DNA of 64,000 nucleotides from Asterias rubens (GCF_902459465.1 NC_047068.1:10664001-10728000), one strand, 5' to 3'. Positions 1-58,384 are shown, counted from the stretch's first letter. A program made the numbers and translations. Notes: a model not told the origin generated them from the letters alone.

Positions 1-3000
1 CCCCCCCCCAAGACCGATGACATTAGCATAATTTGCTCAAGAGATTAAGAAGTCATGGTGGGTCCAACACTTTCCTTTCCGGAATAGAGAAGTATCCATG
101 CAAGTTGAAACCTCATCATGGTGTCCTTATCTCCCCCCCCCCCTCCCTAAAAGAAGTTTTAAAAAAATGTAAATGTTTGCAATTTTCCTGAAAAACAGAA
201 CGAAAATCCTTCTTTGCAACCACTGCATTAAATCTGTTCCAGGCAAAACATATCTGGACTGTTTCCCCCCCCCCCAACCCTCAAGTTCAAAAATCTTTCA
301 CTGCCATAAAAAAAACCTCTCCTATAATCCAATTAAAGTTGGTATTTGGAGCCAGTGAAGTGGCATGGCAAATCCCTCCACTCCTTTGTGGGGCTACACA
401 ACATCCTGTAGGGCACCCTCATACAAAAAAAAAAAAGATATAAAAGAAAGAAAGAAACAAAACTGCTGCGAGAATAATTCCATGCTCTCCCCCAAAAAAG
501 GCAAGCAGAGATGGGAATCTCAAGCAGCTAACACATTCACTCCTGGGTTTCTGTCTGTATGCAAATGAGATGCATAATGCAGGCTCTTTCAAGGAGTTTC
601 CTAGGGATAGGATTAACACCCAAGGGTTTTACAGAAATACCCATTGAAATTTTTCTGACAAGGGAGCTTGTGCACTGTTAGTGAAGGGCTGTTTTGTTGT
701 GTGTGTGTGTGTGTGTGTGTTTGTTGAGCATGATAGAGGTGACTATAGTATAGTCGATTTAGAGTTAGAAATTGTAATTTTTGTTATACTGGTGGTTTAT
801 GCAGTGAAAGATTTCCCTGGTATAGCAGAGCAAAGTTCTATGCAAATTGTATCACTTCAGCTGCTATTCAACAATCATCATTTGCTACTCACAATAACCA
901 TTCAGTGTGCACAAATTTTGTTTTGGTCAAAATATTTTGCTATGCAAAAATGTTGGATGAAATTGTTTCCCCCTTTATGTACAACGAAGAATTTTAAAAC
1001 ATAAATTATAAGAGGTATGCTGTGATGACAAGATGAGTTAGTACGACACCTCAAGGATAATATCTCCGGTAGAACGTTGTGGAACCCCCAAGAACCCAAC
1101 TCTTACTGTTATTGAAGAAACAGTGAACACCCACACAGACACAAAGAAACAATCCTTCCACTCATTGTTACCATTCCAATCTTTCGTCTCCTAATTATAG
1201 CTCTCCATCCTTCATATCTGTCGCCCTTGAATCATATAAATCTAATTGTGAATTATACCCGCTTGCAAACTTTCCCCATTGCCCACCGCGGTCTTGTTTG
1301 CATAGCAGTTACGATAATCAAGGGACTGGTGGGAAACAGGAGCCCAGAAAAAGAAAGAAAAGAGGAGAAGAAAAAAACCTTTAAAGCGTTTCCATTTAGA
1401 CGCCCCCCAACAAGGACCCTCTTATTACCGGTTGTAACAATGTTATATTTGGTAATTGGCAGTGTGAACCTGTGAATAGAAACCTGCTGCTTGTGGGACC
1501 AGCCATGTCTCCCAGCTTGAACCGAAGCAGTGTCCTGTGACACACGGTGCCTTCTGTTTCACTTGCCGCCACAATCAAATTGAATTACGTCGGAAAAATC
1601 AACTCAAAAACCCCTGAACTGAAGCAGTCTCCGCTTTTACTGCCCCGATCTCCAGGGGGGGTTAGGGGGAGAGTTAATTTCAAGCAAGGGGAAGACAGCA
1701 ACAACTGTTACAGTTCAAAAAATGCAGGCAGTTCCACTTTGGGGGCTTGATCAAAAAAACAGTCAGACAATGCCGACATCCATTTTTTTAATCTGGCGAA
1801 ATTTCTGACAGCCAGGCAGCGCTTGTATAGTGCAGAGGAAAGCAATACAAACAGGCTGGCGTGGAAGCGACGTGTTAGGCACTCGACTTCAATAGCTGCC
1901 GCTTTTCCCCTAGACAAGCTGGTCAGGGAGGCATGTTCAAATAGACGTTTATCGGGAGATTTTCTAGCTGACGGCATGCAAAAAGGAGCATGGCGGCAGC
2001 ACAAAGGGACGCCTGCTTATGAAAATTTGATTCCGAGATAAAAGCCCGCACAATAGAAAATACCACAAGTCATTCAGTCGTGTGATTGACTTCGTATTAG
2101 AGTCTTTTAGATAGCGCTGACCGTTATAAACACCGGGCAAACAACGGCATTGTCGCGCCATCGTCGGCACAGTACTTCCTCAGCAGAGGCTTGGCTCAAA
2201 AGTAAAAAAAGGAGGGGAAAATACCCCAAATATTTGGCATTGAAAATCAAGAAAGGAGGGGGGGGGTGAAAAATACATCTTTATGCTGATTGGAAAATTG
2301 TCTTTTCGAATTGTGTCAATAATCATGTATCTGATCCAACATGATGGGTTTTATCCATTGAATCCAGTCCCCCAGACATGATTTGCATTTGTACCCGAGG
2401 CGTTCGACTGATTTCATTATCCTTGCCAGGATGAAGCAAACCCAATTTGTCGATAAGATCATAACTGGGTCATTGAGTAAGACTTCGTTTAAGTCGGCGG
2501 GCCCTTACAACTTTTTCTTTGACCCCCCCCCTGAAATCTCATAGGACTCCTTTCTAATGATTGGGCTTTTTTTTCTCTTTCTGATCTGGGCGATATGACT
2601 TGGCTCTTGACTTTTCTACCCGAGACTGGATCCCTAAATTGCACGTAAATCTGAGATCTTTAAAAATAAAAAGTAATCCCAGAACTGCCGACATAAACAA
2701 TTCTACTCTAAAAAAGAAGCAATGTTCGGATGCTGTACTTGTGGGGATCTTTTGCTTCATTCTCTTTGAACTAGATATAAAAGCAGGGTTCAGATCTCAA
2801 AGAGCTGTGGTTCTTTTTTTGTGAATTTTTATTTGGATAAATATTCTCCAAATTAAAAGCGTCAAAGAATTTCACCGACATTAACATCAAAATTGCTTTT
2901 TTCAGGTTGTTTGTTATCTGTTGCAAAACAACAGATTCTCTCTCACCCTGTATCTATAATATTATATTCCTTTACACGTACATGTATTTCTTTGTTGTTT

Positions 3001-3015
3001 GTTTGTTTGTTCAAT

Positions 3016-3927
3016 CAGCCCTGATACTTCGGCTTTTAAGGGGCACGGCAGTTTTGCCTTGACTTTTTGTAAAAATTTAGGGCACCAAGGCAATTTTCAA
3101 AAATTTGGAAGGGCATCACGGCAATCATAAAAAGTTGCGAAGGGCACGACGGCAGTTTGAAAAAAAACCTCCGAGTTGCCTGTTAAAAATAGTTCTTCAA
3201 ATTTTTCCATTTTCTAACTGTTACCCAATGAAAAAAAGAAAGCATTCATCTAATTCAACAAAATAAAGAACAACTACTTACAATACACAATAAATAATTT
3301 TTGTTCATACGTAATCCTACTATTGGTCATGCACGTTGAGTAGTTTTTCGTAGAGCACTAAAATTCCCACGTAACTGCTCCATTTTGACACGATGTTGAC
3401 AGAATAAATGCATGCGGTGCGCGACGCCTATGCTGTACATGATGGTACATCACATGTACCAAGCATGGGGAAAACCACTATCCCAGCATGCAAAGACACG
3501 TCGAGTCTTTTTCTCAAGGTGTTTAGCGTTGGTTCGCGTAATTTTACCACTAGAGGGCGTTTAATCTCACGCTATCGCTCTGTTCCGAAACGCCCTCTAG
3601 CGTTCGATGTTTTTAGTATTTTTTTTGTCGCACGCAAAGAACAACGACTAACGGGCCTGAAATCTGCTGTTGTACCTTACGTGGGTGAAATTTGGGGTAT
3701 ATTTCGTTGCGTGAAATTTACACAGACATCGGGACTTTTTGGCTTATTTTCGAACTTTGACAACGTTGAATATAATTTATTTTCGGGACGAAGGGCACGG
3801 CGGCAATGATGAGAAAAGGGCACGGCAATCATTGCCGTGAAAAATTGTTTTTTTGAAGGGCATTGCGGCAATCGGTAGGGGCAACGACGGCAATTGCCGT
3901 CGTTGCCGTCGTGAAGTATCAGGGCTG
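3016..3927. mobile_element. Non-autonomous hAT-like DNA transposon, 15-bp TIR CAGCCCTGATACTTC, apparent 6-bp TSD TTCAAT
   Basis: TIRs at 3016-3030 and 3913-3927. TTCAAT at 3010-3015 and 3928-3933. GGGCAC/GGCAAT subterminal repeats. Confidence 0.75.
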
Positions 3928-4237
3928 TTCAATTATGTATATTTGTTTACACATTATTGATCAAATTTGAAAGTAATGACGCCAAGACATTATTAAAAGC
4001 CCTAAGGAACATAAATGCTTTTTACATTAATCTACAAAGTTCTCTCTTTTTTTTTACAAAGAGCTATTTTATTCTTTGTTTCAATGATTTTCTTTCAAAA
4101 ACTGACAAGCGTGTCTTCTTCACAAATATCTGCATATTCCTTAAGTCAAGTCACTCAAGATCCTTGCCTTGAAATTACCATCGCCCCCTCCCCCCTCCCC
4201 TGCCAACCAAACATAGTATTACTCATGTACTACTTAC

Positions 4238-4393
4238 ACACTCGAGTCCGTGAGCGACATTGTATCATCAGAGATAGCATCGCTCGATAAGCTCTGTAAC
4301 TCAGAATCGTTAGTGGAAACGGCCGGCGCGAAAGACGTGAAGCTCGGATGGTATGGACTGAGTACTCTGGCGCTGCTTCCTCTCAAATAGCAC
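4238..4393 (-). CDS. AXIN: Axin coding exon 2 (in window): CYLRGSSARVLSPYHPSFTSFAPAVSTNDSELQSLSSDAISDDTMSLTDSSV
   Basis: Acceptor tgtgacAG at 4394-4395 and donor GT|GTAAGT at 4237. The exon is 156 nt, phase 2 to phase 2, in frame with the RGS exon. It matches the conserved Axin segment APATSANDSE-QSLSSDA-TLSLTDSSV. Confidence 0.93.
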
Positions 4394-4544
4394 CTGTCAC
4401 ACAAAAGGGGAAAAGAAATATCACCTGTTAAAAACTGCAGACAATGCCAAAATGGACGCCAAGGTGTTTTCCTTGGCGCTGGCAAGAGGGAAGTCTTTGG
4501 GTGGGGAGGAGTCTTAGACGAGGCTGTCACAGCTTTCAAAGCAT

Positions 4545-4807
4545 GATACAGGCTTCGTTTTTTGAAATGGCAAAGACGCCACGAGGAATTTTCTCCTTAC
4601 AAAAGAGCATCCTATATAAGGAAATTGTACATTTCTACTGTAGCTACATGGGCACGGAGGCAATGACATGGGGGCACCGAGGCAATGACATGGGGGCACC
4701 GAGGCATTGACATGGGGGCACCGAGGCAATGACATGGGGGCATGGAGGCAATGACATGGGGGCATGGAGGCAATCCCCTTCGTTGCCTCCATGAAGTATC
4801 AGGCCTG
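4545..4807 (-). mobile_element. Related hAT-like element containing six 22-bp tandem units (4650-4774)
   Basis: End GAAGTATCAGGCCTG. GAGGCA(A/T)T recurs every 22 bp (4657, 4679, 4701, 4723, 4745, 4767). Homologous to 45395-45558. Confidence 0.7.
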
Positions 4808-6504
4808 ATATTTTGTTCTTGTACGACCTACGTTACAGATCGCCTTTTCTTACTTGGGAATGAGAGTGAAAATTCCTGAAAAATGGCTCACAGGTCTGGG
4901 GTGGGGTCCCCAACAGATAAAATATTATTTTACACCATTTTTTGGGTGACGTTAGAGACTTTCTATTTGTTTCCGATTGTCTTGAGGACACATATTGAAA
5001 AACGAGTGTATTTTTACAAAACTGAATTTGACCTCTTTAAAAACAAACTTTTAGTAGTTTCCTGGTTAGGTCCGAGACTTCTCCCAAAATGTTTTTATTT
5101 TATTATAATACAAGTTTTGGGGGCAGTTTTGACCTTCAAAATGACCAACATGCTTTTAAACTTATAGTAAAAGCGGATATCCTCCTAAGACCTTCTTTGA
5201 ATTTCAGGATTTCAGTCAATACGAAAAAGAAATAGATTCTACAATTGGCAAAATCCAAACCACAAAAAGAAGAACAAGAAAAATCCTGAGCAAAAAAAGT
5301 GTCTTCTACATTCGCACCTGAAACTCACCACACTAATAAAAAAAGAAAAATCAATAAAAGGCACTCAGCCAATTACAGATATTTTCTCTGTGACCACTCG
5401 GGTGGAATCACATTAAAAAGCTCAGGTGACAAACATCATCTCTCTTTTTTTGGTCACTAACCTATCGCCCAAAATCAGGCGTAAGTTCACAGCACTTTCA
5501 GACACTTCTTTTTAAGAATTTTCTTTTTTTATTTGTGGCTTGGGCCATTTGCCAGTTTCCTACCCCGACAAGGATTAGATCAACACAATTTTTCGGCCAC
5601 ACTGCTTGCCCAGTTGGAGACCAATCCCCCCATGGTTCCGTATAGTTTGAGACGAGAGGGAAATAAAAGCCTCCTGTTTTGTGTTGGCGTACAGGAGGCT
5701 GATTTTTTAGTGCGATACAGGGAAAATGGACAGCTTTTATGGATACAGAGTTTGTGCTTGAGTGATCAGCAGGTCGGAGCAGGAGAAAAGGCAGTCACTG
5801 GTTGGACAAACACAAAGGGTCAATGGCGGGGCCCCATACAGGATGGACTCTAAACCAAGAATAACTGGGGAAGAACATATCCATCATGGGGGACGTTAAT
5901 GCAACATCTGGCCCCATTTTCATTTTATGTAAGAAAATATTCACACCAAACCCACTCACAATGTTTTTAAGTTCTTTCTGAAAACAAAGCAACAAATTTG
6001 GGACTGCACTCAATTTCATAAACCACCAAAATTAAAAACTGTGGTTTTTTTTTTCTCTCTCTTGATTCCTTCTCCCAATTCCTCACAAAATTTAGTTTCT
6101 AAAATCCTGTTTTTTCAAATACTAGTTTCTAATTTAGAACTTGAGTTACAATCCTAAAAAAACACCACACACTTCAAGTCCAATATCTGTCGTTTGACAA
6201 AGTCTTGTAAAACCACATAATCTGTACATTTATATACATTTGTACATGATACATGTAGACCGTCGAAGTCATGAAAAAGCGCACACAAAAATTAAGCACA
6301 ATTTTTTTCAAGCACATTTTGGTTTGGCTTTAATTCCCCCATCCTTGCTTTTTGTTTGTCAACCCTGCGTTGTAACTGTAACTGACATCTTTTCAGGAAT
6401 ACGATACCTAGAGTATTGCACTCAAACTATTAGTGCAAGAGATACTACTTCTAGCCCTGGACTTGTATGACCTACATGCATTACAAAACCTCTACTCTCC
6501 CTGT

Positions 6505-6522
6505 CCTTTGATGTTTGCCGCC
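6505..6522 (+). promoter_or_regulatory. Bipartite TCF HMG + Helper site CCTTTGATGTTTGCCGCC
   Basis: Matches SCTTTGWW followed by a GCCGCC Helper core. A near-identical motif lies at 21976-21993 on the minus strand. Confidence 0.55.
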
Positions 6523-7439
6523 TAAATGCCATCTGCCTGTATAAAGGACTCAATACTAACAAGGGCAATTGCAATACCTGCAAAGGATGTGAAACTCATT
6601 TTGTAAAGTGTGCTTTGAGAAGGAAAAAGGGGGGTGGGTGGTGTATTAAACTTGATTTGTTTATAGTAATGGATTGGTTTACGTGTTAAAGTTGTCTAGA
6701 GTAGTAGATGTGTTGTGTGTAAGGCTGTTTATATTTGGCCGTGGCTACATGTGTGCAAAATGCATGCTGTTAGATGTGTATGTACATGAGAGTTTTATAC
6801 AGGGTACCAGCTACAGTTGGTTTCTACACATAGTGTGCATTGATCATGCTGAATAGAATGGCATGACTGTACTATCATTATGCACCGTAGAAAATGACAT
6901 GGGGCTTTGCAGGTAGAAACAAAAAATCATGACTTATTTTGAGGCAGTGAACAAAAACTGAATTTGTTACTAATGATTGATGCATTTATTAATGGAGTGC
7001 ATGAAATCCTTTCACCAATTAATTGTTTTGTATAATTAGCACTTCAACCTTGACTCACAAAGTGTTGATTCCTACAATCCTACATTACGTTTGATTTATT
7101 TACAATCAACTAGTTAAAACATCGATTGGACAGAATATAGTCGCATGTACAATGCAATGCGTCCAAATATCATCCAGGCCACAACATGCGGCTAGCCGTG
7201 CACATGTAGATTTCACATATATAGGGTTACAATACCGGCACGTAATACACACACAAAAAAATAAACAACAAAGGACTTTGGACTGTATTCTGCTACATGT
7301 ACATAAATGTTGTTTTACAGAGCCACAGGCACCTAGGCCAGACAGCCACAAAAAAATGCAAGGAGCTGATTTTTTGGCATCTATTAAAAAAAAAGAGAAA
7401 AAAAAAAATTCACATGACATGTCTTTATATCTCATTTTC

Positions 7440-7610
7440 AAGGTTTTAGTCAGGAGTTGGTTATGAGGCGTCCAAAATTTACTGGAAACGTAAAAAGTGG
7501 GACGTCCAACTTGTTTACCTACATGTACAATACAATTTAATGTGAATGACAGATATAAAATAGGGCGTCCAATTTTAAAACGGGGAGTCCAAAAGACATC
7601 CAGACACCCC
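7440..7610. repeat. Dispersed repeat with an inverted partner at about 10085-10240 in the same Axin intron
   Basis: AAGGTTTTAG...GGACGTCC...GTCCAAAAGAC is mirrored by GTCTTTTGGACACCC...CTAAAACCTT. Confidence 0.5.
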
Positions 7611-10600
7611 ACTGGCTTGAGTACCTCATTGCCCTATTTTTCTCAGGTGGAGTAGCAAATAGGAAATCTTGGGTCATTCCATTTATCTTCGGAATATGAT
7701 GATCAGGGTAGTGCCTGTTCGTAGATCCCCGTGCTGTTAGAGCAATTATATGGGCACTAGGTCATTACAACACAAGAGATTCACTGATCTATCGCGCATC
7801 TGGGCACGGTTATTAAGAAGATTTTTTGTCCTCTTTCTCGCGTCCTCCTCCCTTGGCATTCTGGGATTGCTAGCCACGACGGCGACCGTCAATTTAATAA
7901 CAGTAGCCATGTTATCCTACATGAACCTGGGCCAATAATCCTGGAGGTATTTGCGTAAAACGAGTATCCGGAAACTTCTGTTCAAATACACCCCCATAAT
8001 GGGGGAATGCATACATTGCGTATGACCGTATACTGTACGCCTGTGATGTACATGTGCCGCTAGATTTTCGAATGCAATTATTTGTACATGTACGATAGAG
8101 AACCTATTTCTCAAGTGGCGGACATCTTTCTTTTTATATCAAGCCATAAGTTGAATTCTTAACCGTTTGGAATTAATATCTCTTACACAGATGAAACATA
8201 GTTTAGGATTTACAACTGCATGAACAGTAACCCGGGCGACTAAAACGTACATGTGTTTGTTTCAACATGTAAACGGTATTTTTATAATTCTGGTTAAAAA
8301 AATTCAACGTGAACAAAATGTCAAGAGCTGCTCGGATCATCAAAACAGAAATTTAAGGGATGTTTTTTTTTATTTATTCGTATTCCACCTTATTTAAAAT
8401 AATAATTTGGGGAATGAGTCATACATAATGTCAGAGTTGTGCCTTAACTTTCGTATTTGTTTTTATTTGGGGGCCCCAGCAAGTATAAATGTACACAATT
8501 TTTAAAGCGTAAAAAAACCATAATAAAACGGAAGTGAAGTTTTGAATGATCTTATCCCCTAATTTCTGCCTAGTACCCAACACATATTTTTGAGCTAGAG
8601 TACCAGTTAACATCCATTTGTGTGAACTTGGGCCTTGTCTCATCTGTATTCAACTTTTGCAAACTACATGTACTACATGTACTTATTTTATTCCAATGAA
8701 AAATCCACATCATCAACAACAACCTTTTTGACCTTGATCTTTGACCTCCAAATTCAATACAGGTCTGTTCCCAGACCCAGTGTGACTCCGCTCAACTTGG
8801 TGGTGATCAATCCAACTCAAATTATCCAACGGAGGCGAACCAGTTTATGGATGAACGAAGGCAAAAGACCCTTTACGTTATTATCCAATCATGCATTTTG
8901 GGAAAAAGCAGGATGACCTGTGTGTAAATGTTTACCATGAGCATGAGATGTTTTTTGTTTATTTTTCGTTTTTGGCAACTGTGCTTTGTTTTTTATGTAC
9001 TACTGGGCAGTCGGATGCTTCAAACACTTCAAGGCATCTTTTGGACCACTCAAACATTTAAAACCAACATGTAGCGAGGCACTTTTACAGCATCTTGGCT
9101 TTGAAGACTTTCATTGCATAAATGTTGAAACTGCATGCTACATGTATATTTATGCGTATGTCGGCAGATTTTGAAAAAATCTTGTCTATTATGCAGGATA
9201 AAACAAACTAAAATTGTTTAGAGTTAAGTAATGAATTGGCTCCGATCTCAAAATAAAATATATTAAAGGAAAGGTCCAGGACGCACATTTGCCTCTTCTT
9301 AATTCCTGAATAGTCTGGTACCATTTCAGTGAGATTCAGTATCCGTAACACTGTACATAATTGCAAAAAAACACAGGGAACCTCGTAACATAAGGGCCTG
9401 ATAGCAGGCATTTTTGTCTACAATGAGGTGAAAAACAATAAATCATATGAAACAAAATGTAAAAGCATTGATTATTTTTGTCAGTGTATTTCATAATGGC
9501 TCCTATTGAAGTCGAGCCACAGAACAGTTCCGTAAAGAGTGTGAAGAATTTTGATAATTCTACACTCTCTGGCCATTCCTAATTGGCTTTTATCCCAAGA
9601 GACACCCAGGGGGGCCAACTTTCCCTGAACTGAAGCCAAGACCTGGCTTTGTCCACCCAAGGTCCCCTTAACCTTTGCCTACTGCATGCTCCCCAGACCA
9701 ACAACCCTCACTTAGAATGGGTCCCTTCATTACACACATACAGCCACACTGCCAACTGATTATGCATTGCACAGATGGTTGGCGGACTGCAACATGGGAA
9801 TTCTGGTTTTCTCTGCTTGGAGAGATTGACTTCAACTGGATAGGTCAGCAAGGTCAGAGCGAACCATCCATGCTATGTGCCCTTCGTAATTGAGAAAGCA
9901 ACCCACTAGTGTAGCACGACATTGACTCTAATATTGTATCTCAGAATGTACAGTCAGGGGGTTGATAAATTTAGTGTACTTTGTGATTTCAGTCAAAGGA
10001 AAAAAGGAGGGGGGGGGGGTGACTAGATTTGATCTATCAACTGTTTTTTTTTATATACATATTGAATCAATTGCTCTCACATAGTGTTAGCCAGAGGGAT
10101 ATCCGTGAGTCTTTTGGACACCCTGTTTTATCTAAGTTTCATGTAAATGTATTGTAGGTGAACAGTTTGAACACCCAGTTTTTAAATTCCTCACAAATTT
10201 GGACATCCTTTCACTTAATCCTGGCTAAAACCTTGATTGCACTTATAGTAGAGGCCTAAGGCCTATATGAAACTATGTTTGGTTTGTGTACTTAAATTCT
10301 CCTTTCAAATAGATAAATCCCATTCATATAAAAAACAAGTGTTATCAATCAAGTCTGTGAACCACTTCACAAAGCTACCACTCTCAACTGGGTTTATTAT
10401 TGCTGGGGTAAACAAAATATATATATAAAAAAATCTGAACAGAAATGACACCATTAACACCAACAGTCAAAATTCTTTCCATTTGGTTTCCCTCTCCCAG
10501 CCGCACAGACTGTATACTGATCTCATTTTAACCAGGGGCCATTTCAAGGTGCAGTTACAAAAACTTTATGGGGCTTGACGTTTTATGGCCTCGCTTTATT

Positions 10601-13600
10601 ATCCAGCAGTCTTTTGTGAGTTTTATTTGTCTGTGGTCTTTCTAATAAGAGAGCGGTTTTACATCTCTGATGGAGCCAGCCTGCTTGATTGCATAGCTTT
10701 TTTATGGACGTCATCTGAAAAAGTGTACAAACTGTTGCTTGCTTTTTTTTTTCTTTTCCTTTTTACGAGTTGCATAGTTTCTTTTATCTCCCACCAATCA
10801 CTTCTTGGGTGAATAACTCTGCAACTGTTAGAAGTAAATTTATTTCTATGGTTCCTTTTTTCCCCCTGCTAGTCATTAATTTTTGAAACTGTATGAAATC
10901 CAACCCTAGCAGAGGTTTTTATCAGGATTTTTTTATGAGAAGAGTTGTTTTTAGGGTTGGAGGATTTAACTGTTAAAATCCTATTAAGTGGATTCATTTC
11001 ATTCATCAATCTGAAAACAGTCCAGGGCTTTTAAAGGAAATAAAGTGTACAGGTGTTTTGCAATCCACTGTCTGTGTTCAGATTTGATGTACCTAGAAAT
11101 AATCTACCCAGTCAGTTTCCCTTGTATTGTGGTTTATTACTTTAAAAAAAAAAAAAAAATCATCAAAATATTTATTATCAGAAGGGTTTTGATCAACACT
11201 CCTTTCTCGATAATAAACATTAAACACCTCTGTGTCTGTTGTCATCTGGCACGTTTTCATAAGTTTAATGTGAAATGTTCTGCTTGAGGGAATGTAAAAA
11301 AACAAATATGTAATTTTGCAAAACTTTGATGATTTAGACCAGGGTGCAATTTCATAGAGCTGCTTAAACCGAGAAAAGTACTTGACATTTTTTTAGTGAG
11401 CAATAATGTTTGTATTATCAGTCATAAATGGAGCAAACGAAATGGTCCATGTATTTTTGGCTGGTTTCCATTTTGTGCTATGCTATTGAAGCTATGCAGA
11501 GTTTATCGCCGTGAAAGTGCAATAAACATAATCTATATCCCTTTCAAGACAGGAATAACAGTTTTCTCAGAGAAAAAGAAAATTGTTTGTTTCCTTTTAT
11601 GAATTAAATTATCATCTCACAAAATTTATGTTTATCTTTTCCCCCCACTTTATACCATCGGTCCAATATTTGGGTTGTAAGCGTTTTACAACAGCTAGGA
11701 CTTATTCTATTTTCTCTCTTTTTTTTCTCTCATGAGGTCGAAGCTGGGTTGGTCAGTTAAATCCACTGGGCCCATCTCTGAGAGAACAAAAATATTGCAG
11801 AGCACATTTATTTAGGGAGTCATAAAATGCAGGGTTTTCGCATCTGCTGCGAACATAATTGCCTTAGTGACTCACACACGTGAGCACCCTCCTTCGATGT
11901 ACAACTGAGCCAATCACATGGGCTGTATTTTGATATGGGGCACAAGCTTTGCGTATAAGATAAGCCCTTAACATCTCTAGTACGTTTTGTCTGTTCATGT
12001 TTAGCATGCTATAGTCATGTCGTTGGTGCGGCTGTGGAGCAATACATGTTTTTTTTATCAGTCCAAACCTTGGCGCCAACATCAGTGATTGTTTGCATTG
12101 GCTAGGATTTTATGAATTTAATGTCATTTTAGTGTATATGTGGATAAACCCATCATAAGCAGTGTATGCAGCACAGAATGGTATTGCACCAAAGAGAAGT
12201 TCCCATCAAATTATACACGCTATCACAGCACTGCTCAAAATGGGAAGTATTCAAAGGTTAAAATCCAGGGATTTCAGAGTCTAAAAGTTGCAGCGGCTGC
12301 GTTGGAAGGTCAGTAGGCAGTGACCCAAGTAGGTACATTACATGGGTTATCAATTAGGGTAAACAAGCGCACAGATTAGGGGATCAGGGCTGTTTGGCTA
12401 CTTGTACCTTATCAGGAAACAAAGGTTACCAGTAACTAGTTGTTTTTCTCCAAAATTAATCTTTTGACGAAAAATAACTAATGTAACCAGCTAAACCAGC
12501 TATGCATGCATAAAACTCAATTTCCAGATTATATCGCTAGCTCAAGTCAAGACAAATTGCTATAAGTTTTATAGCAAAAAAATATGTGATTTTCAAGTGA
12601 TTTTGTTGTGTCGCGAAACAGGTTACCATGACTTTTGTATGGTTTTGAAGTATGCCTACATTTATGTAAATCTTTCTGTAAATAGTTCATTCATGCAAAG
12701 ACGCACTAAGGTTCGATTTATCATAGTACAGTATGCAGAGTATCAGCCGAAGCTATAGGCCTATGGGGTATCTCTGGTCCACCAAAATAGAAGTGCTTCA
12801 CAACCAGTTTCACCAGAAAGCATGTTCTAAATGGCTAATTTTGATAGGTCAAAGCCTGTTGAGTACGAGTTTGCGCTACCCCTACATGCACACTGAATTG
12901 CATAATTACCGCAGTTTGTGATAAACCAGCCCATTCAATGCCATAACAGTTTGTTCCAGCATGTTATCATTACAATCAGAATATCACTTTCATAGCTAAC
13001 TTAACAATAATAAATACCACGGTTCACCCTTTTGACTATTATGGGCTAATCGCACAAACAAAAATTAAAAAATTAAAAAATTACCAAACATTCTAACCCT
13101 CATATTTTGGACAAATTACAAGAGAAAAAAAATTAAGAAAAAAACATATTTACAATGCTCCATCCATGGAAATCACCACTTAAGCTTTTTTTTTTTTTTT
13201 TAACAGAGACCAGATACAAATATTTTGCACACAAATGCATAAAATATCCACCAAAATGCCCCCACCCCCCCTGGACAGAGAGACAGCTGAACTTGTTTGA
13301 TCTTGGGATATAAATTGTTCAAGTGCATGTAAACATCCTTGTAAACATACACACACCACCACACATCTATGGAATAAACACAGCCCAGAAATGGAGCAGT
13401 CTGACTGTTTGTTTTTCGCTTTAATTTATCACCTTGGAGGGACCATTTCCTTCTGGCCTTAATCCCTGATTTCGTCTTTACATTCAGGTCAACAGTGGAT
13501 ACACCCTGAAAAAAGTCTCTCATCAAAGAAACCTCCCTCAAAAAAAGGGTTAAGCCTTATTTCAAATACGGACAGCCTGATAACCATGAAATCCTCTGGA

Positions 13601-14109
13601 AGACTTCATGTTTTTTTGATGATTTAAAAATTCTATCTCCCCAACGAGCCACCCTCAGTATCTTAGTGTCCATGACCTTTCATATGACCCTCACCCCCCA
13701 CACAATCATGTTTTGAATGGAATAAGACAAATCGCAGTGATCAACCTAAGTTAGTATATGGCAGGGAAAAAAAATCAGTTCCAGAAAGAAACTACTAACT
13801 AGTGCTAGATCACATTCAAATCTCGCTCTAGTTAATATTCCTCTGTTCAACCAAAATTTTTAAAAATCTGTATTGACTGGTTCAAGCAAGTGTAATAAAC
13901 TGGTTCAAGTTATTGTTCAATGCGATCATTGCCCGATGGCCTGTTTCATACAGTAACCATTTGATGTACTCTGTGTTCTTTACAAGTCAAAAGAGGTGTC
14001 CGACCAGTTCCACCTTCAAGACACATTTTGGTGTTCATTGACTGTGAGTGAAAACATGGCTCAAATGAGCAAGAAAGTCCGTCAAAACCGAGCCATTAAT
14101 TATACGTAC

Positions 14110-14972
14110 CCTTCTTGTGTTTTACTCGTCGAATGTCGATGAAACGAAGTCTTCATCAGCATCTCCATCGTTAGAGGCACCTGTCCCTGATTTAATGCAG
14201 CATTTTCCCCAGACGGGATATCAGTGAGTTCGGCATCCTCAGGTAAGGTTGGCAGGTAACCTGTTACTCGTGAGTTCTCACCGCTGGAGCTGCACTCACT
14301 ACTCTTTGGACTTATTCCACCATTGTTTATGTATTGCACGTATATATCTGACTTGAGAAAACTTGGATAGGTTGATTCCCGGATAGTCTCCTCCACCTCG
14401 CCCTGGGCGGGGTCGAACAGGGACTCATCGAATACTGAGCTGCGGACCATGCCCGCTATGTTAGTTCTTAACGTTGAGGATATTTTCACCGCTTGTTGAC
14501 CGTCTGCTTTGATGAACTTCTTATATATGACCTTGGCTAGTTCGTTCCGTTTTGGATCATCGGCTGATTTCTTCTTAAATCCCTCGGTGGCTAACCAGAA
14601 TAAAAGAGGGTCCTGAGCTTTTTCCTGTACAAGAAACTGCTTGAATAAGCATATTCCGTCCTCGTCGGAGAGTAAGGCGTGTAGGCTTTCAGTCCAACGA
14701 GTGTAGGGTGGCGTCACGGACGCCGACCCTTCGGGTTCGAACCCAAGAGGAGCCTCATCCTCCTCTCTACCTCCAAGTCCAAGTTTCATGGCCGACATGA
14801 GTGTCGACCGACGCGGTGTTGCCGAGGGTGACCGTTCCTTGGTGATGCTGACTGAGCTGGTCGACACCGTTTCATTCTCTTCACCCGGCACAGGTGGCCG
14901 CTGACTTGTTGGAAGATTCTCAGTGAAGTTTCCACCACAATCTGCCATATAGTGATATACCTGAAGTGTCAT
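14110..14972 (-). CDS. AXIN: Axin first coding exon: tankyrase-binding motifs (RPPVPGEE, PLGFEPEGSA) and RGS domain
   Basis: ORF 14100-14993. ATG at 14972 in GCGCCATGA context. RGS-like sequence WTESLHALLSDEDGICLFKQFL...FWLATEGFKK...YPSFLKSDIY. Donor GG|GTACGT at 14109. Acceptor ttttttttcttcaagcAG at 15073-15074, so the exon spans about 14110-15072. Confidence 0.95.
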
Positions 14973-15022
14973 GGCGCCGCGGAATGCGCACAATTTTGCG
15001 AAAAGATGTCCACCAGCGGCAT
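14969..15022 (-). promoter_or_regulatory. 17-codon uORF whose TGA overlaps the Axin ATG (ATGA)
   Basis: ATG at 15022 reads MPLVDIFSQNCAHSAAP*. The stop at 14971-14969 overlaps the main ATG at 14972-14970. Confidence 0.6.
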
Positions 15023-18000
15023 GAGGAGTCTCCTTAATTTATCTTCCCAATTTTTGAAAACACAGTCTCCTTCTGCTTGAAGAAAAAAAAAAAACGCACA
15101 CAGTATATCCAGTGGGTTCAGGATTGGATATTCATAAGTGCTGTGAGATAGGGATAACTTGATCAATGGATGACAACTCCGCTATGCACAACACCCTTTC
15201 AACTCCTATCACCAACTGAATAAACCTGCAACAACAGAAGAGACAAAGAATTATGTTAATGAGTAATCCCATATGCAAATGGTAATGGAGAGCACTAGAG
15301 TCTGCCCAAATTGCCCCCTGTGTGATGAATGCATGCCTGTTATGTAACACTCAGGAATTTGTCCACTGAGCACACATTGCCACATGTCCTCACAGATCAT
15401 TGGTGCACTGAAGAAAAAAAGAAAAAAGGGGCCCCCTCTGACCACAGCACAGGTTCCATGTGTTATAAAAGCTACGGGAGGGCAGTAAAAACAAGTCTGT
15501 TTTCTACATCCCAGCAATCTCCAGTTTTAATGTCTTTTTATAGTCACCGATGATTTACTGCTCTGGACATTTCATGTGGGAAAATGTTCACATAAACCAT
15601 TAAAATTGTCCCACCAAATGAAGCAAGAATTGCAGAAAGCTTGATGAAAAAAACCTTCTGGTTCTGAACACAAATGGGCATTACATAATGCACTCTCTAC
15701 AATTTTAGACTGGACAGCAATACATGTACTTCTCACAAGCCCTTCTTCAAGTGCACAAAAAATGTCCAAGATAAAATTGAGTAAAAGACCAAACTTAATG
15801 ACGTAATTGTGGGCCATACCTCTATATTTCCGATTGTAAAGAAATCCTTTAAACTAATCCCTGAAATTTATAAAAAAATACCATAAAAGTTTAAAATCAC
15901 AAGTTAGTACTTCTGCAACAACAAAACTCTTGATAACAAAATTTTACAAGGATCAGTAAATATAATGCACGCATAATTTATCGACTTACAAATCTCCGTT
16001 GTACCATACATGTATACCCTGCGTATAATTACACCCCCTTCATATTTTCAGTTTATCCCTTCCCTTCTGGGACATCGAGCGTGTAAGAAGTAACCCAAGC
16101 AGCACAAATGTAATGCGCAAGGGTCACCAACAAACAGCAACGGCAGGTTTCCACAGGAAAAAATTGACCAATGAGTGTGAAATGAACCCAATTTCCTTAT
16201 TTCACACCTTAAAACTGATTGGCTTTCGTTGATAAGTTCACTTAAAAAAAATATATAATTCAACTATCCAGTCACATTCGAGTCCAGATAAATTACGGTC
16301 AACTATTTGACCCTCCGTCTCTTGGGTTTTAAATTGATTGTGAAACTAAATCAGAAAGTTAAACGCCAAGTCAGAATATTTTAAGAAACTATAAAACACT
16401 TACAAAGTTAAATAAAAAATGATAAGCATTACACAAACTAAGATTTGATACCAAAGCACGAGGCACAATTTTACTAATAACATTCAAAGATGATCTTTGT
16501 TTCGTTCAACACCACCAAACCCTTTTACCCAAAAATACCTCAGAATCCATAGACCACACTTCCAAAATTTAGGTACAGAGTGCCTCCAGTCATAAAAAAT
16601 CCTCTTGAAAAAAACATGAAAATAAAGTACTGACCTAAAGTTTCCAAAATCCCTTGAAAAAAAAAACCTCATCAGCAGATGCCTGCGGTAGAAACACTAC
16701 TTAAAACCCATCCAATATGAACACACACAACCAACACAAGAGTCTACGAGAATGTTTTTAATCTGGTTCCAATACCTCAAACGAGGTCATCTCACAAGAA
16801 CCCTGTAGTTGATTCTGGAACAAAACCAACTCCCCCCCTGGGCAAAGACCCAAGACTTCTGTCTCTTATTTCATCAAATGCTCAGAGTTTTTTTTATATA
16901 TAGTCTCCTTAAGAGTCTCCTTAAATAATTATGGAACTAAACAATCCCTCCCCCCCCCCTTCACCTTTGAAATTTTACTGACCCTGATTCCAATAATTTT
17001 GACGAATAATTCCTCCAAGACATTTTTTACATGGTCAATGTACTCCACTTATTTTTAGGTCATTTAAAATCTTTTTACCTTGAACAAATTTGTGATTGGG
17101 TTTTTAAAACACCTCAGTCTTTTGGAAGTTCTGGAAATCCATATTTTATTTTAATATAAAGTACTAATTAAACGTAGATAACTGCTTTTAGTTCATGCAT
17201 TTATAGTAGTTCGATTCACCATCTGCCAGTGTAAACTGCACTGCTGTTCATTTTCACTTGTGTGGTTTTTTAAATCAAACTACAAAATGCATACCATGGG
17301 GATTTGTTAGAGTGTGCATTCTTGCCTCCAGTAGAGTACATTATGTTTGATAACTGTACCAGCCTGACCCACAGACTGGAAATAACTCAAGTGGTCTACT
17401 AGGAAAATAGCTGACATTGAAACATAAAAATATCTGTCTGTTGTTTATAAAAATTACAGTCGGACATTAATTTGAACATACTTTCCGCAAACAGAAACAA
17501 AATACATTAAAAATAATAATACATTTAACAATTGAGCGACTTAAATTCTCAAACTTCAATACAAGAATTTTAAGCCAGAGTTTTCGTTGTCCACCCTTTT
17601 TTCCTGAACTGTGTAAATAACAAACGGCAGCCTGCATGGTTAAAAATGCAACAAAGCAAGGGCTCTATGGCCATACAGACAACTGAAATTCAAAGTCTTA
17701 ATAATTTTGGCATAAAACTCAATAACAACAAAATGTAAAATCTGAAATCTGGGTTGACAAAGTATTAGCTGAAACCCATGCAGCTTTATAGCGTGACCTT
17801 GCTCTATTGACGTGTGACCATTAAAGATGACCTAATTAAATCTGCAAAAATCCATTCATAAAATGAGTAAGACTAATCAAAGTTAAAACAGCCATGGCCT
17901 TCTCTTGTGCGATTTATAAATTGAATTGAAATTGTCCATGACACGGTTCTTTGCTTTTACTTGTTAGAAACTTCTTATTTATTTGCAGGTGTTTTTTCTT

Positions 18001-19295
18001 TAATTCATACCAGGAACCAGTATGAGGCAAGAAGGAAAAATAGTCTGGTTCCTTCTCTGTTTAAATGATCATCACAATTGGTTATTTCTATTCCATATGG
18101 GGTACATGACCTACAAGGTAAAAAAATGTTCAAAGATGTTTTCAAGTCGAAAGTTAAAATGTAACCAATTAATACACTATCAAAAATAAGAATGAATGCA
18201 AATCCGCTTTTCACTTACTTCGACCTAAAATTGTTTAGTTTTACCCCAAAATTATAAATAACATGATGGCTGTCAGATACACAGCATTTTTTCCAGAATA
18301 TTAAACATATACAAACGTTATTTCATTAAGTTAAGCATTTTGTTTTTGCTGTCAATCATATCCATAGTTATAGTTTACTGTGTCAAAATGAATTGCTTCT
18401 GAATTATTTTGAACAAATTGAGAAGCTATACTTCCAAATAGGCTATTCTTGCTTTTTGACAAAAAATCAAATTAATTTGTTAAATGTGTTCTTAATCTTA
18501 CAAAAATAAAAATAAATTGCTGCTTTCTAACTGTCGGTAATCAAAACAAAACAACATTGACTTTTGCAAAGAAAAAGCATCATATAACAAACCTCAAATT
18601 TACTTCAACATCCAATTACAAGTCTGGATAACATTTGAAAATGGGGTAGTTTAACAATCACAGCCCAGATATATTTAGTTGCACGATAGTGCCACATACA
18701 TGTACACTGACTTACACACTACAGCCAATGGGTTTCATACGGAGGTCGAGCTTGGTCATGCCATGTTGAGAACACAATCCGTAAGTAACCTTGTTGCTGG
18801 GACAGCTTCCTGTAGATCTATAGAGAGAGCTAGCTCTAACCGCCGAAATCAGCCAAAAAAAAACAGTAATTTCAAGCTCGTTTTAACACACAATGTAACC
18901 CTTTACCACCACCAAGGCTTTTTTATCACTTGTGATACAGCCATGTATTCCCTTTGGTAGGTTTACATGGCCGTTGTACGACGGTACGTACAAGAGGCGA
19001 CTGTAGTTCAAACCATGCCGTGATGGTTACACACAGACAGAGCAGCACTAACTACATGTACATGTACTGTACACTATACTCGACCGAGAGAAGCGTTCGT
19101 GTTGACTGGTGTAATAGTCAACAAAGCGTAATTTCACTCACCCCAAACGTCGATCAGCCAAAAGCTGGTGCAATTATTATCCAGGACTACACGTAGGCAA
19201 CTCACGTACAGCACATGTAAGCATTTTCAACAAGAAATACCATGTGAAAAAGGTGGAATTTCGAAGTTTGTAGGGCCGTTCCGTCCTTTACTTAC

Positions 19296-19436
19296 CGGAT
19301 AGCGTCTCTGACTGCGAGAAGTTTTTCTGTGTGTTTCAAAGTGCAACACATCAAAGCATGTGCCCGCCGCCCGATGGCTCCCAAAGGGCAGTGACGTTAC
19401 CTCAAAGGAAAAGCCGCACCAATCACAAAGGAGCAC
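19296..19436 (-). promoter_or_regulatory. Candidate Axin promoter / non-coding first exon with TCF-site cluster
   Basis: Donor CCG|GTAAGT at 19295. TTCAAAG at 19335, ACATCAAAG at 19348, GCCGCC at 19366, CTCAAAG at 19401, CCAAT at 19419, CACAAAG at 19424. The region is CpG-rich. Confidence 0.5.
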
Positions 19437-20651
19437 AATTTAGACCTGCGGAAGCGTGCATTCATAAAATGGGGAGGCGCAATTGTATTTGTGTCACTTA
19501 TCTTAATATAAACACTGCCACTGTAAGGAACTATTTCTCTTTGTATTGTTTATATAAATGTAGCTTGAACAAATACTATGACGGCCTTTTTTATACAATA
19601 TGTTTGTGCTTGAGGTTCAAATGATGATTGGTAAAACTATGTCGAGTATAGCAGTTTTACCCTTTTTGATGAATAGAATGATCCGATGCCCGAGGGCATT
19701 CGGCATTCTAGCGCCAGGCACACAGAGAGAAAGGACCGCACGGAAGTCCAGCGGGTCAACGTTGCGTGAAAGGCAGGGAAAAAAAAGACCGTTTCAAAAT
19801 GATTCACTGCATCACTCATGTACTTACTGTTGGCAAAATGAGGAGGCTAAATTGATGAATTGTGCAAAACAAACGGCCCCAATTCAAGGATCTTTGTGCA
19901 GTTTTGTTAATGGCTAGCCCCCCAAAACCAGAGCAACGTCAAAATCCGTGGCAGTGGAAGAAGACTTGCGGGTGTGTGTGTGTGTCTCTATACCCGAGCT
20001 CCCCATACGGCATGGAGCCGCTGAATGTTCCCTGCCGATTCCATTCAAATCAGCCAACGAATTAATTTGGCGTTGACCGGGCTAGGTCGGGGTCCGGTCA
20101 ACTGCGGGCCTCCGCACAAGCCAAGACGGCGCCTGTATAAATGAGCCAAATTGCCTCTTAGGGTCGCCTTTTCTCCATAATATTTCTGTACATTTTTTTA
20201 GGGTAAGCAGTTGACGCGATTTAAGACCAAAATGGAAGGGCATACTCAGGTGGAGGGGCCGGGAAAACGCACAATAAAACCGACCACAGGGAGGAGACAG
20301 ATTTAGGATCCATAATTTATAAAATAGCGTTTGCTGCTGGCAGGTATCGGTGACAATATTGACAACAATCTGTTAGCCGCCATCTTAGTACAACAACCAA
20401 GTCATAAAACTGGTTGGATTTGTGTAATATGGAGGCGACGTGCTATATTGACTGTGGTATGTAAACAAGGGTAATAAACAGTAATGCTTAGGGTACAGTC
20501 CTGAAAATTGTATCAACAGAAACTGACAATATAATACAAAACTTGAATAGTAGATTCATTAATGGGTATAAAAATAATTGAAAATAAATGTTTTCCTTTT
20601 GTTTTTAATGTGCACAATCCAATCGGATACATAAGGCGAAGTTAAAAAAAA

Positions 20652-20973
20652 CATGTTTCGCGTCCCCGCCCGCTTCCTTTTTACAGGCCGCCTCCTTTTT
20701 TATTTTATTTTTTATTTTATTTTTTTATGCACATTATTTTTTTTTTATTTTTTTTTTTAGGGTTATTTTAAATGATCTCAGCAAAAACAATCTGAATGTC
20801 TTGTCTGAATGCCTCGACTAAATTGTTTCATTTATGTTTTGTGTATTTCAGCAGTAGAAAAAACAATGGATATTTGACATTTTAACAAAGAATGGCAGCC
20901 ATCTTGAAATAAAAAATAAAAAATAAAAAGCCCCTCTTCCTCCTTTATTTGAAAAACCCGGACGTGAAACATG
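20652..20973. mobile_element. MITE with TIR CATGTTTC(G/A)CGTCC
   Basis: Inverted termini and internal T-rich/A-rich mirrored tracts. Confidence 0.55.
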
Positions 20974-21975
20974 AGGGGAAACAATGTATGGGTAATAAAT
21001 AGGGTAAGTAAATAAAAAGCCGGAAACTGGGCAAAATTCCAGTCTGTAAAATAATCTGTTGATTTCTCTTCAAATGTTTATAATCATTAATAACGGTCGG
21101 ATCGGAACCCTTGGTTCATCACCATTTAAATAAACGTAACCAAACCGAGGCTTGTAGGTAAAACACATTTGGACCATTTTGTATAAAACAAAAACCAATA
21201 GTTATGATCATACTTTTACTAACTGTCGGGGAACTTGGCAAAGAAACTGGCAATACGAACACGATGTGAATCTATAACAAGCTACACTTCTCAATTCTCC
21301 TCAGTGATTAAACCGATGTCCGATCCAAGTAGTGTAGAGAAAAATACCCCAAACCCCGCACAATCTAAAAAAAAACACTTCCATATTCAATACAGGCCTT
21401 CCTCATGATACGCCTTGCACACAGACTCACACTGTATTGTGGCCCCATTCAGCGAAAGAAGAGAGGCGGACGGACTGTGCCGACGTTAATCATTTATCAC
21501 CGCTAATAAAAACAGCCGAGGCTCTCTGATCTTGCCGCCAACGACCAGGTCTGCTTTGCCCGTACCGGCTTTATCTCTCTGCAGCATATCGGCCATAAAA
21601 ACAGAAAGGAGCGGCAGAAACCCGCCGCTGCAGTTCATGGCCTGCAAGGCTGACAAAGAACTCCATATAGCGATTTTTTTAAGGGAATGAATAAACACAG
21701 TGGGACTGGATGAGCTGGATTAGCGAGTTGCCCGTTTCAACGCCAACAATACGCCTATGGCTAAACCATCAATTGTGTGCCCGGGTTATACCATTCCTTT
21801 GTAGTTTTTTGCCCCTCACCCTCTCCCCCCTCTCTCCTGTCCCTTCCATATTTTTTTTTATTTTGGGTTTTCCCTGCGATAAGTGGAAGGCTGCTTAGGA
21901 AAATGAGCAATTATGATGTGATGTAGATTGGGCCGACATTTTCTTTCACCTACGAATCCTTCCTTTGTCGGTAGC

Positions 21976-21993
21976 CGGCGGCAACATCAAAGG
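21976..21993 (-). promoter_or_regulatory. Bipartite TCF HMG + Helper site CCTTTGATGTTGCCGCCG
   Basis: Perfect CCTTTGAT plus GCCGCCR, upstream of Axin in a CpG-rich block (21480-22020). Confidence 0.55.
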
Positions 21994-58027: not shown

Positions 58028-58384
58028 NNNNNNNNNNNNNNNNNNNNNNNNNNNNNNNNNNNNNNNNNNNNNNNNNNNNNNNNNNNNNNNNNNNNNNNNN
58101 NNNNNNNNNNNNNNNNNNNNNNNNNNNNNNNNNNNNNNNNNNNNNNNNNNNNNNNNNNNNNNNNNNNNNNNNNNNNNNNNNNNNNNNNNNNNNNNNNNNN
58201 NNNNNNNNNNNNNNNNNNNNNNNNNNNNNNNNNNNNNNNNNNNNNNNNNNNNNNNNNNNNNNNNNNNNNNNNNNNNNNNNNNNNNNNNNNNNNNNNNNNN
58301 NNNNNNNNNNNNNNNNNNNNNNNNNNNNNNNNNNNNNNNNNNNNNNNNNNNNNNNNNNNNNNNNNNNNNNNNNNNNNNNNNNNN
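58028..58384. other. Assembly gap (357 N)
   Basis: Run of N. Confidence 1.

What the first reader, a model, noticed from the sequence alone, without database searches (positions are those of the whole stretch)
1991..21993. Recurrent bipartite TCF HMG + Helper element across the Axin locus
Seen: CCTTTGATGTTTGCCGCC (6505-6522, +), CCTTTGATGTTGCCGCCG (21993-21976, -) and CCCTTTGTGCTGCCGCCA (2008-1991, -) share the same arrangement and spacing of 2-4 nt. I saw no such pair in the other three genes. Known: C-clamp-containing TCFs bind SCTTTGWW plus a GCCGCCR Helper site, and vertebrate Axin2 is a Wnt negative-feedback target through TCF sites in its promoter and intron. Inference: the single invertebrate Axin here is a direct Wnt/TCF target with an explicit Helper grammar distributed over 20 kb.
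Basis: partly seen in the sequence, partly recalled or inferred. Interest (0 to 1): 0.7.

Follow-up and report, generated by a model that had tools for sequence, protein, structure and literature searches.

The report
TCF sites wired into starfish Axin

Summary
The window is Asterias rubens. Axin lies on the minus strand; only its first two coding exons are in the window. The three HMG+GCCGCC pairs exist exactly as written. They are the only such pairs in 64 kb (about 0.04 expected, 3 seen, 0 of 1000 shuffles) and are not repeat copies.

Compared with Acanthaster and Patiria:
- Site 3 (1991-2008) is conserved in all three starfish.
- Sites 1 and 2 keep the HMG motif and a 6/7 Helper in Patiria, but are degraded in Acanthaster.

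The strongest element was not listed. At 19313-19431, about 170 bp upstream of a conserved splice donor, is a block with a CCAAT box, a CRE, a GC-rich reversed Helper, an E-box and an invariant CTTTGAT. I found it upstream of Axin, in the same orientation, in three starfish, two sea urchins, a crinoid, two hemichordates, amphioxus (a perfect Helper 4 nt from the HMG site) and the brachiopod Lingula.

My best reading is that Axin is a direct TCF target through a promoter module inherited from early bilaterians, plus starfish-specific enhancers. All of this is sequence inference. Vertebrates were not tested.

The parts
21976..21993 (-). Site 1: an 11-bp HMG site (CCTTTGATGTT) directly abutting Helper GCCGCCG (FF0). 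It lies about 2.6 kb upstream of the promoter module, in the Axin-DDX47 intergenic region.
   Evidence: It sits in an asteroid-conserved block. Patiria has CCTTTGAAGTT+GCCGGCG; Acanthaster has CTTTTGAAGTT+GCCGACG.
21962..21974 (+). A second, inverted HMG-like site (CCTTTGTCGGTAG) flanking the same GC core, which gives a quasi-palindrome spanning 21962-21993.
   Evidence: invariant in all three starfish. In Patiria it forms its own FF1 pair with GCCGCCG.
21464..22076 (-). Distal upstream conserved non-coding block that holds site 1.
   Evidence: blastn gives 71-73% identity over about 630 bp to Acanthaster L004 3602-4178 and Patiria L005 4160-4754. Only its far end (about 21503-21571) is detectable in S. 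purpuratus.
19313..19431 (-). Deeply conserved Axin promoter module. In Axin sense it reads: CCAAT box 19424-19413, CCTTTGAG 19408-19401, CRE ACGTCA 19397-19392, CCTTTGGG 19387-19380, GC-rich reversed Helper GGGCGGCGGGC 19372-19362, E-box 19362-19357, invariant TCF site GCTTTGATGTG 19357-19347, second TCF site ACTTTGAAAC 19342-19333, and AAACTTCTCGC 19324-19314.
   Evidence: (densest CTTTGW cluster in the window).
19116..19476 (-). Asteroid-conserved block containing the promoter module and the putative non-coding exon 1. A splice donor GGG|GTGAGT, conserved in the three starfish, has its GT at 19141-19140.
   Evidence: The donor is inferred from conservation only; no transcript data were available.
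14109..14972 (-). Axin first coding exon (aa 1-288: tankyrase-binding and RGS domains), with the ATG at 14972.
6505..6522 (+). Site 2: an HMG site plus Helper GCCGCCT (FF1) in the 9.7-kb intron between the two coding exons. It is antisense to Axin.
   Evidence: It is weakly conserved: Patiria has GCTTTGATCTT-TT-GCCGACC at the aligned place, and Acanthaster has it degraded.
4237..4392 (-). Axin second coding exon (aa 289-340). The remaining exons lie beyond the window start.
1991..2008 (-). Site 3: CCTTTGTGCTG overlapping Helper GCCGCCA by 1 nt (FF-1), in the next intron.
   Evidence: CTTTGT(G/T)CTGCCGCC(A/G) is conserved in all three starfish.
1432..2072 (-). Intronic conserved non-coding block (76% identity over about 650 bp) that holds site 3. 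It has several ultra-conserved stretches, including a SOX-like AACATTGTT.
   Evidence: It is not detectable beyond starfish.

Best explanation
Axin in this starfish is most likely a direct transcriptional target of TCF/beta-catenin, giving negative feedback on Wnt signalling. The main input would be a proximal promoter module (19313-19431, minus strand). In it, an invariant TCF HMG site (GCTTTGAT) sits 4-8 nt downstream of a GC-rich, reversed Helper-type motif (GGCGGC/GGCGGGC), among NF-Y (CCAAT), CRE and E-box motifs. Further TCF/Helper-type pairs lie in starfish-specific conserved enhancers upstream (site 1) and in introns (sites 2 and 3). They would add tissue- or level-specific input, much as vertebrate AXIN2 has several TCF-bound regions.

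What is shown: the motifs, their statistical excess, their positions in the gene, and their conservation.

What is inferred: that TCF (not SOX or another HMG protein) binds them, that the C-clamp reads the GC motif, that the module is the promoter, and that it confers a Wnt response.
For: - The three listed pairs are real and exceed chance.
- Axin exons map to 14972-14109 and 4392-4237 on the minus strand, so all sites are upstream or intronic.
- The densest CTTTGW cluster in the 64 kb is at 19331-19430, with GCCGCC in the middle.
- That block aligns upstream of the Axin ATG, in the same orientation, in many species. These are Acanthaster and Patiria, with a core that is nearly fully identical; S. 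purpuratus at 84% and Diadema at 87%; the crinoid Anneissia at 81%; and Ptychodera and Saccoglossus. It also aligns in amphioxus (nhmmer E 1e-10, reading TGGCGGC-ATGT-GCTTTGATCTG) and in Lingula (E 2e-7, 237 bp upstream of the annotated start codon).
- CTTTGAT is invariant in all ten species.
- 14 of the 15 starfish conserved blocks are not found beyond starfish, apart from the far end of the distal block, which matches S. purpuratus.
- CTTTGW motifs conserved in all three starfish number 9, against 0-5 for 19 permutations of the core.
- Site 3 is conserved in three starfish. Sites 1 and 2 are partly conserved.
- From the literature: the single amphioxus Axin is induced by GSK3 inhibition and reduced by Wnt secretion block (PMC3033397, PMC7292647). 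Sea urchin zygotic Axin becomes restricted to the posterior/vegetal domain (PMC8034878). Invertebrate TCFs, with Asterias rubens among the species surveyed, keep the C-clamp (PMC9303524). FF0-2 and AK0-6 pairs are the preferred arrangements for fly TCF (PMC4154663).
Against:
- The transcription start is not mapped.
- The GC motif in the promoter also fits an Sp/KLF GC box, and it is only a 5-6 of 7 Helper match in some species (GGCGGGC in the crinoid).
- Deep conservation of the block could be driven by NF-Y, CREB or bHLH promoter function, with CTTTGAT bound by another HMG protein.
- Six of the nine conserved CTTTGW motifs are CTTTGT, which SOX proteins also bind.
- The exact FF0/FF1 arrangement of sites 1 and 2 is Asterias-specific, and Acanthaster has lost both HMG cores.
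- Human AXIN2 was reported as largely independent of the C-clamp in one array study (PMC4267635).
- Only this window and nine orthologous loci served as background, not a whole genome.
Confidence: 0.65

Rival explanations
1. The conserved block is a general housekeeping-type promoter (NF-Y, CREB/ATF, Sp/KLF, bHLH, ETS). Its CTTTGAT is bound by SOX or another HMG-box factor, or is conserved for a reason unrelated to Wnt. The listed pairs are incidental parts of enhancers that serve other inputs.
For: The module holds a canonical CTGATTGG NF-Y motif, a CRE, GGGCGG and CANNTG, all conserved as well as the TCF motif. Most conserved distal motifs are CTTTGT, which is SOX-compatible, and the site 3 block holds a conserved AACATTGTT. 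Sea urchin Axin is also maternal and initially ubiquitous (PMC8034878).
Against: CTTTGAT(G/C)T is the textbook TCF core, not the SOX core, and it is invariant in ten species next to a Helper-type GC motif at a preferred spacing. Orthologous Axin is Wnt-induced in amphioxus (PMC3033397, PMC7292647). A second CTTTGAA follows in starfish, the crinoid and Lingula.
Confidence: 0.2
2. The three listed pairs are chance juxtapositions of short motifs in a locus that happens to be rich in GCCGCC, and were picked out after the fact.
For: Nine of the twelve GCCGCC in the window lie in the first 22 kb. The orientation and spacing criteria were chosen post hoc. Site 3 fails SCTTTGWW and site 2 fails GCCGCCR at one position each. 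Acanthaster lacks intact versions of sites 1 and 2.
Against: None of 1000 shuffles reached 3 pairs. Unrelated Helper permutations pair 2 to more than 10 times less often. Site 3 is conserved in three starfish, and sites 1 and 2 have aligned HMG plus near-Helper counterparts in Patiria.
Confidence: 0.1
3. The conserved block acts at the RNA level (a structured 5' UTR element), or it belongs to the divergently transcribed neighbour DDX47 rather than to Axin.
For: The transcription start is unmapped, so the block could lie inside exon 1. DDX47 is head-to-head with Axin, with its ATG near 25546.
Against: RNAalifold gives only -6.7 kcal/mol with no covariation, and Rfam finds nothing. The block keeps its orientation and its position upstream of Axin in loci where DDX47 is not the visible neighbour within the fetched flanks. 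It lies 6 kb from the DDX47 ATG.
Confidence: 0.05

Closest known systems
Vertebrate Axin2/Conductin Wnt-response elements (Jho 2002, Lustig 2002, as cited in PMC3033397; TCF ChIP peaks in PMC4267635)
   Same: A Wnt-pathway inhibitor gene carries TCF sites in its promoter and introns, spread over several regions (3-9 TCF-bound sites at human AXIN2), which gives negative feedback.
   Different: Vertebrates split the job between AXIN1 and AXIN2, whereas there is a single Axin here. AXIN2 was reported as largely C-clamp independent. I could not test whether either vertebrate promoter retains the module found here.
Drosophila nkd and Notum Wnt-responsive modules with HMG-Helper pairs (PMC4154663, PMC3896468)
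   Same: Bipartite CTTTGAT-type HMG site plus GCCGCCR within a few bases. Site 1 is an exact FF0 and amphioxus has an exact AK4, both within the preferred arrangements. The genes are also Wnt feedback inhibitors.
   Different: The gene and phylum differ, and the fly elements are validated by EMSA, reporters and ChIP whereas these are not. The promoter Helper here is often GGCGGGC or an AK8 GGCGGC, which is outside the optimal fly spacing.
Amphioxus Axin as a Wnt read-out gene (PMC3033397, PMC7292647)
   Same: A single invertebrate deuterostome Axin is induced by GSK3 inhibitors and lowered by Porcupine inhibition. Its upstream region carries the same module.
   Different: Those papers report expression only. 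In the papers I read, no cis-element was described.
Cis-regulatory sequences alignable across bilaterian phyla (recalled from memory, not checked here)
   Same: A short non-coding block next to a developmental gene is retained at sequence level between protostomes and deuterostomes.
   Different: The few cases I recall are enhancers of transcription-factor genes. This one is a promoter-proximal block of a signalling scaffold gene. Membership was not assessed beyond the alignments.

Membership tests
Bipartite TCF site (HMG site plus C-clamp Helper) | HMG site matching SCTTTGWW | tested here: met
   Met by sites 1 and 2 and by the promoter site at 19357-19347. Site 3 has CTTTGTG in Asterias (not met) but CTTTGTT in the other two starfish.
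Bipartite TCF site (HMG site plus C-clamp Helper) | Helper GCCGCCR within about 10 bp of the HMG site | tested here: met
   7/7 at sites 1 and 3 and 6/7 at site 2. The promoter has GGCGGC at AK8 and GGCGGGC at AK4. Amphioxus has a 7/7 Helper at AK4.
Bipartite TCF site (HMG site plus C-clamp Helper) | Both half-sites conserved together in related species | tested here: inconclusive
   Yes for the promoter pair (ten species) and site 3 (three starfish). Only partly for sites 1 and 2: Patiria keeps the HMG site plus a 6/7 Helper, and Acanthaster lost both.
Bipartite TCF site (HMG site plus C-clamp Helper) | The organism's TCF carries a C-clamp | not tested
   The TCF gene is not in the window. 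PMC9303524 states that invertebrate TCFs, with Asterias rubens among the species surveyed, keep the C-clamp.
Bipartite TCF site (HMG site plus C-clamp Helper) | TCF binding and Wnt response that depend on both motifs | not testable with these tools
   This needs EMSA, ChIP and reporters.
Wnt negative-feedback target gene of the Axin2 type | The gene encodes an Axin orthologue | tested here: met
   Tankyrase-binding, RGS, beta-catenin-binding and DIX domains are present, and the protein is named axin-1-like in Asterias rubens.
Wnt negative-feedback target gene of the Axin2 type | Transcription rises when the Wnt pathway is activated | not testable with these tools
   This is shown for amphioxus Axin in the literature (PMC3033397, PMC7292647). 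It is not known for the starfish.
   The flanks do not align. The site 2 region is unique in the window. The orthologous positions are collinear single copies. The promoter 19-mer gave only two bacterial chance hits in metagenomes.

The most novel reading that the evidence does not exclude
A block of about 110 bp in the Axin promoter (CCAAT, CRE, reversed Helper/GC motif, E-box, CTTTGAT) has been kept at sequence level since the protostome-deuterostome ancestor. It hard-wires Wnt-to-Axin negative feedback through a C-clamp-type bipartite TCF site. That would make it one of the very few cis-regulatory sequences alignable across Bilateria, and the ancestral form of the vertebrate Axin2 feedback loop.
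Probability: 0.45. Interest if true: 0.8.

Novelty: new member of a known kind. Interest (0 to 1): 0.66.

Why it matters
Axin2 induction is the standard read-out of Wnt signalling in vertebrates, and Axin is used the same way in amphioxus and annelids. In the papers I could search, however, no cis-element explaining this outside vertebrates was described.

A promoter block alignable from brachiopod to starfish to amphioxus would date the Wnt-Axin feedback loop to early bilaterians. It would also give a compact natural element for Wnt reporters in echinoderms. Finally, it offers a clean test of whether the HMG-plus-Helper rules worked out in flies hold in deuterostomes.

Tried and rejected
- Repeat origin: rejected.
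- Coding or Kozak reading of site 3 (GCCGCCATG): rejected. The ATG is absent in Patiria, and the Asterias frame, translated by eye from the A4 sequence, stops after about 22 codons.
- RNA structure or a known RNA family: rejected.
- Isoform look-ups: the Lytechinus (P0003) and Acanthaster isoform X2 proteins were not on record. I solved this through cluster members.
- TARA and Logan contigs with an echinoderm-like Axin exon (L001-L003): they hold too little upstream DNA, and no pairs or module were found.
- Metagenome scan for the invariant 19-mer: only two high-GC bacterial chance matches.
- Literature string searches for the module: only unrelated primer matches.
- Jho 2002 and McCauley 2015 are not held in the library, so I could not compare the mouse Axin2 site sequences.
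- Earlier-findings search by words: nothing.
- tblastn of the Acanthaster DDX47 N-terminus against the window: blank. I placed the start by eye from an ORF instead.
Full report
**Observation.** The three strings are in the window as written. A pattern scan shows they are the only places in 64 kb where CTTTG is followed within 20 nt by CCGCC on the same strand. In 1000 shuffles that keep dinucleotides within 2-kb blocks, oriented pairs with a 0-6 nt gap averaged 0.037 and never reached three. Pairs in any orientation within 10 nt averaged 0.22, against five observed. The two extra pairs are a second, inverted HMG-like site beside the site 1 Helper (21962-21974) and a pair inside a cluster at 19.35 kb. 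The flanks of the three sites do not align with each other, and the site 2 region is unique in the window.

**Locus.** The ORF at 14100-14993 (minus) has the Axin tankyrase-binding and RGS domains. An exhaustive protein search returned a 100% identical 896-aa protein, named axin-1-like of Asterias rubens, with RGS, beta-catenin-binding and DIX domains. Mapping it back shows only two coding exons in the window: 14972-14109 (aa 1-288) and 4392-4237 (aa 289-340). The rest of the gene lies beyond the window start. Site 1 is thus 7 kb upstream of the ATG, site 2 is in the 9.7-kb intron, and site 3 is in the following intron. DDX47 lies head-to-head with Axin, with its likely ATG near 25546.

**Grammar.** Archbold et al. 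(PMC4154663) define the HMG site as 11 bp and name the arrangement with the Helper downstream in the same direction FF. FF0 and AK6 bind fly TCF best, and FF0-2 and AK0-6 pairs are about six-fold enriched in TCF-bound chromatin. By that ruler:
- Site 1 is an exact FF0 with a 7/7 Helper.
- Site 2 is FF1 with a 6/7 Helper.
- Site 3 is FF-1 with a weak HMG half.

**Conservation in starfish.** I fetched the Axin loci of Acanthaster planci (L004) and Patiria miniata (L005). blastn shows 15-20 collinear conserved non-coding blocks.
- Site 1 lies in one block (22076-21464). Patiria reads CCTTTGAAGTT+GCCGGCG. Acanthaster reads CTTTTGAAGTT+GCCGACG, so its HMG core is broken. The inverted CCTTTGTCGGTAG is invariant in all three.
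- Site 3 lies in a 640-bp intronic block (2072-1432, 76% identity). CTTTGT(G/T)CTGCCGCC(A/G) is kept in all three species.
- Site 2 is outside the blastn blocks. A direct alignment finds GCTTTGATCTT-TT-GCCGACC at the matching place in Patiria and a degraded CTTTTGATC without a Helper in Acanthaster.

Since Patiria and Acanthaster are both valvatids (my own knowledge), sites 1 and 2 were probably present in the common ancestor and decayed in Acanthaster.

Across all starfish blocks, CTTTGW motifs conserved in all three species number nine, against 0-5 for the 19 other permutations of the core. As a Helper control, 10 unrelated permutations of GCCGCC pair with CTTTGW at 0-0.09 per occurrence, against 0.22 for the real motif. 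Those counts include orthologous copies, so they are not independent.

**The unlisted element.** The densest CTTTGW cluster of the whole window is at 19331-19430, with GCCGCC in its middle. In Axin sense it reads as follows:
- CTGATTGGTGCGGC (CCAAT box)
- CCTTTGAG
- ACGTCA (CRE)
- CCTTTGGG
- GGGCGGCGGGC
- CACATG (E-box)
- GCTTTGATGTG
- ACTTTGAAAC
- AAACTTCTCGC

About 110 bp of this are almost identical in the three starfish. The same block is found upstream of the Axin ATG, in the same orientation, in:
- S. purpuratus (84% identity) and Diadema (87%), and the crinoid Anneissia (81%);
- the hemichordates Ptychodera and Saccoglossus;
- amphioxus, at nhmmer E 1e-10, where the pair reads TGGCGGC-ATGT-GCTTTGATCTG, a perfect 7/7 Helper at AK4;
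- the brachiopod Lingula, at E 2e-7, with the CCAAT, CRE, GGCGGCGGGCATGTG, GCTTTGAT and ACTTTGAA motifs in the same order, ending 237 bp before the annotated start codon.

In the ten-species alignment, CTTTGAT, ACGTCA and GATTGG are invariant. Profiles of the other 14 starfish blocks find nothing beyond starfish. The one exception is the far end of the distal block, which matches S. purpuratus but does not include site 1.

**Is it the promoter?** Three starfish share a splice donor GGG|GTGAGT about 170 bp downstream of the block (GT at 19141-19140). In Lingula a short first coding exon follows the block at a similar distance. The motif set (NF-Y, CRE, GC box, ETS-like) is typical of a TATA-less promoter; that is my own knowledge. 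I therefore read the block as the proximal promoter with a non-coding exon 1. An RNA-level role is unlikely: there is no Rfam match and no covariation.

**Mechanism.** The most likely reading is that TCF binds the invariant CTTTGAT in the promoter, with the adjacent reversed GC motif read by the C-clamp. Beta-catenin would then raise Axin transcription where Wnt is active, closing a negative feedback loop. The starfish-specific blocks with sites 1-3 would add further TCF input.

Support from the literature:
- The single amphioxus Axin responds to GSK3 and Porcupine inhibitors.
- Sea urchin zygotic Axin becomes restricted to the posterior domain where the pathway is active.
- Invertebrate TCFs, with Asterias rubens among those surveyed, retain the C-clamp.
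- Human AXIN2 has several TCF-bound regions.

Weak points:
- The GC motif is equally a GC box for Sp/KLF factors.
- Many distal motifs are CTTTGT, which SOX proteins share.
- The conserved block could owe its constraint to the general promoter factors.

**Comparison and novelty.** This works like the vertebrate Axin2 elements and like fly nkd/Notum HMG-Helper modules. Membership in the bipartite-site class is met at the motif level and untested at the binding level. That invertebrate Axin can be Wnt-induced is already known. What I did not find in the searchable literature is any description of a conserved Axin promoter module. That absence is limited to open-access text.

**Verdict.** This is a new member of a known kind, with an unusually deep conservation that deserves a bench test.

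Noticed in passing
L004 42951 and L005 43030 (last Axin intron of Acanthaster and Patiria; outside this window in Asterias): A further HMG-Helper pair (GGCGGC-CA-TCTTTGAT, AK2) is conserved between the two valvatid starfish.
   Followed up: no
window 21503-21571; L006 1304-1371: The far end of the distal conserved block is also found in S. purpuratus. It carries GGCGGCA-A(G/C)ATCA, TTTTTATTAG (Cdx/Hox-like) and GATAAATGATTAAC. It is not a TCF core.
   Followed up: partly
L004 about 3690 and about 18610: In Acanthaster the orthologues of both site 1 and site 2 read CTTTTGA where the other starfish have CTTTGA. I have no explanation for seeing the same kind of change twice.
   Followed up: no
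window 1432-2072: The intronic block holds more HMG-like motifs next to GC motifs that my CTTTG-based scan missed, for example AATTTGAT-TGT-GGCGGCA. It also has a conserved SOX-like AACATTGTT and a palindromic TTTGATCAA.
   Followed up: partly
window about 25546 (+); L004 1-184: DDX47 is transcribed divergently from Axin, and this head-to-head arrangement is shared with Acanthaster.
   Followed up: partly
L008 44849-49565 and L011 30772-32991; L010 1-4756 and L012 33687-38064: There are microsynteny hints. A sodium:solute symporter gene follows Axin in both the crinoid and amphioxus, and a DUF4485 gene neighbours Axin in both Saccoglossus and Lingula.
   Followed up: no
L001-L003: Three contigs, two ENA metagenome assemblies (one from TARA) and one Logan assembly of a public run, carry an Axin first exon that is 71% identical to the starfish one. 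Presumably they come from an unsampled echinoderm larva.
   Followed up: no
window 58028-58384: A run of 357 N, either an assembly gap or masked sequence.
   Followed up: no
window 19127-19117: Just after the putative exon 1 donor there is a GCTTTGTTGAC conserved in three starfish, another HMG-type motif at the start of intron 1.
   Followed up: no
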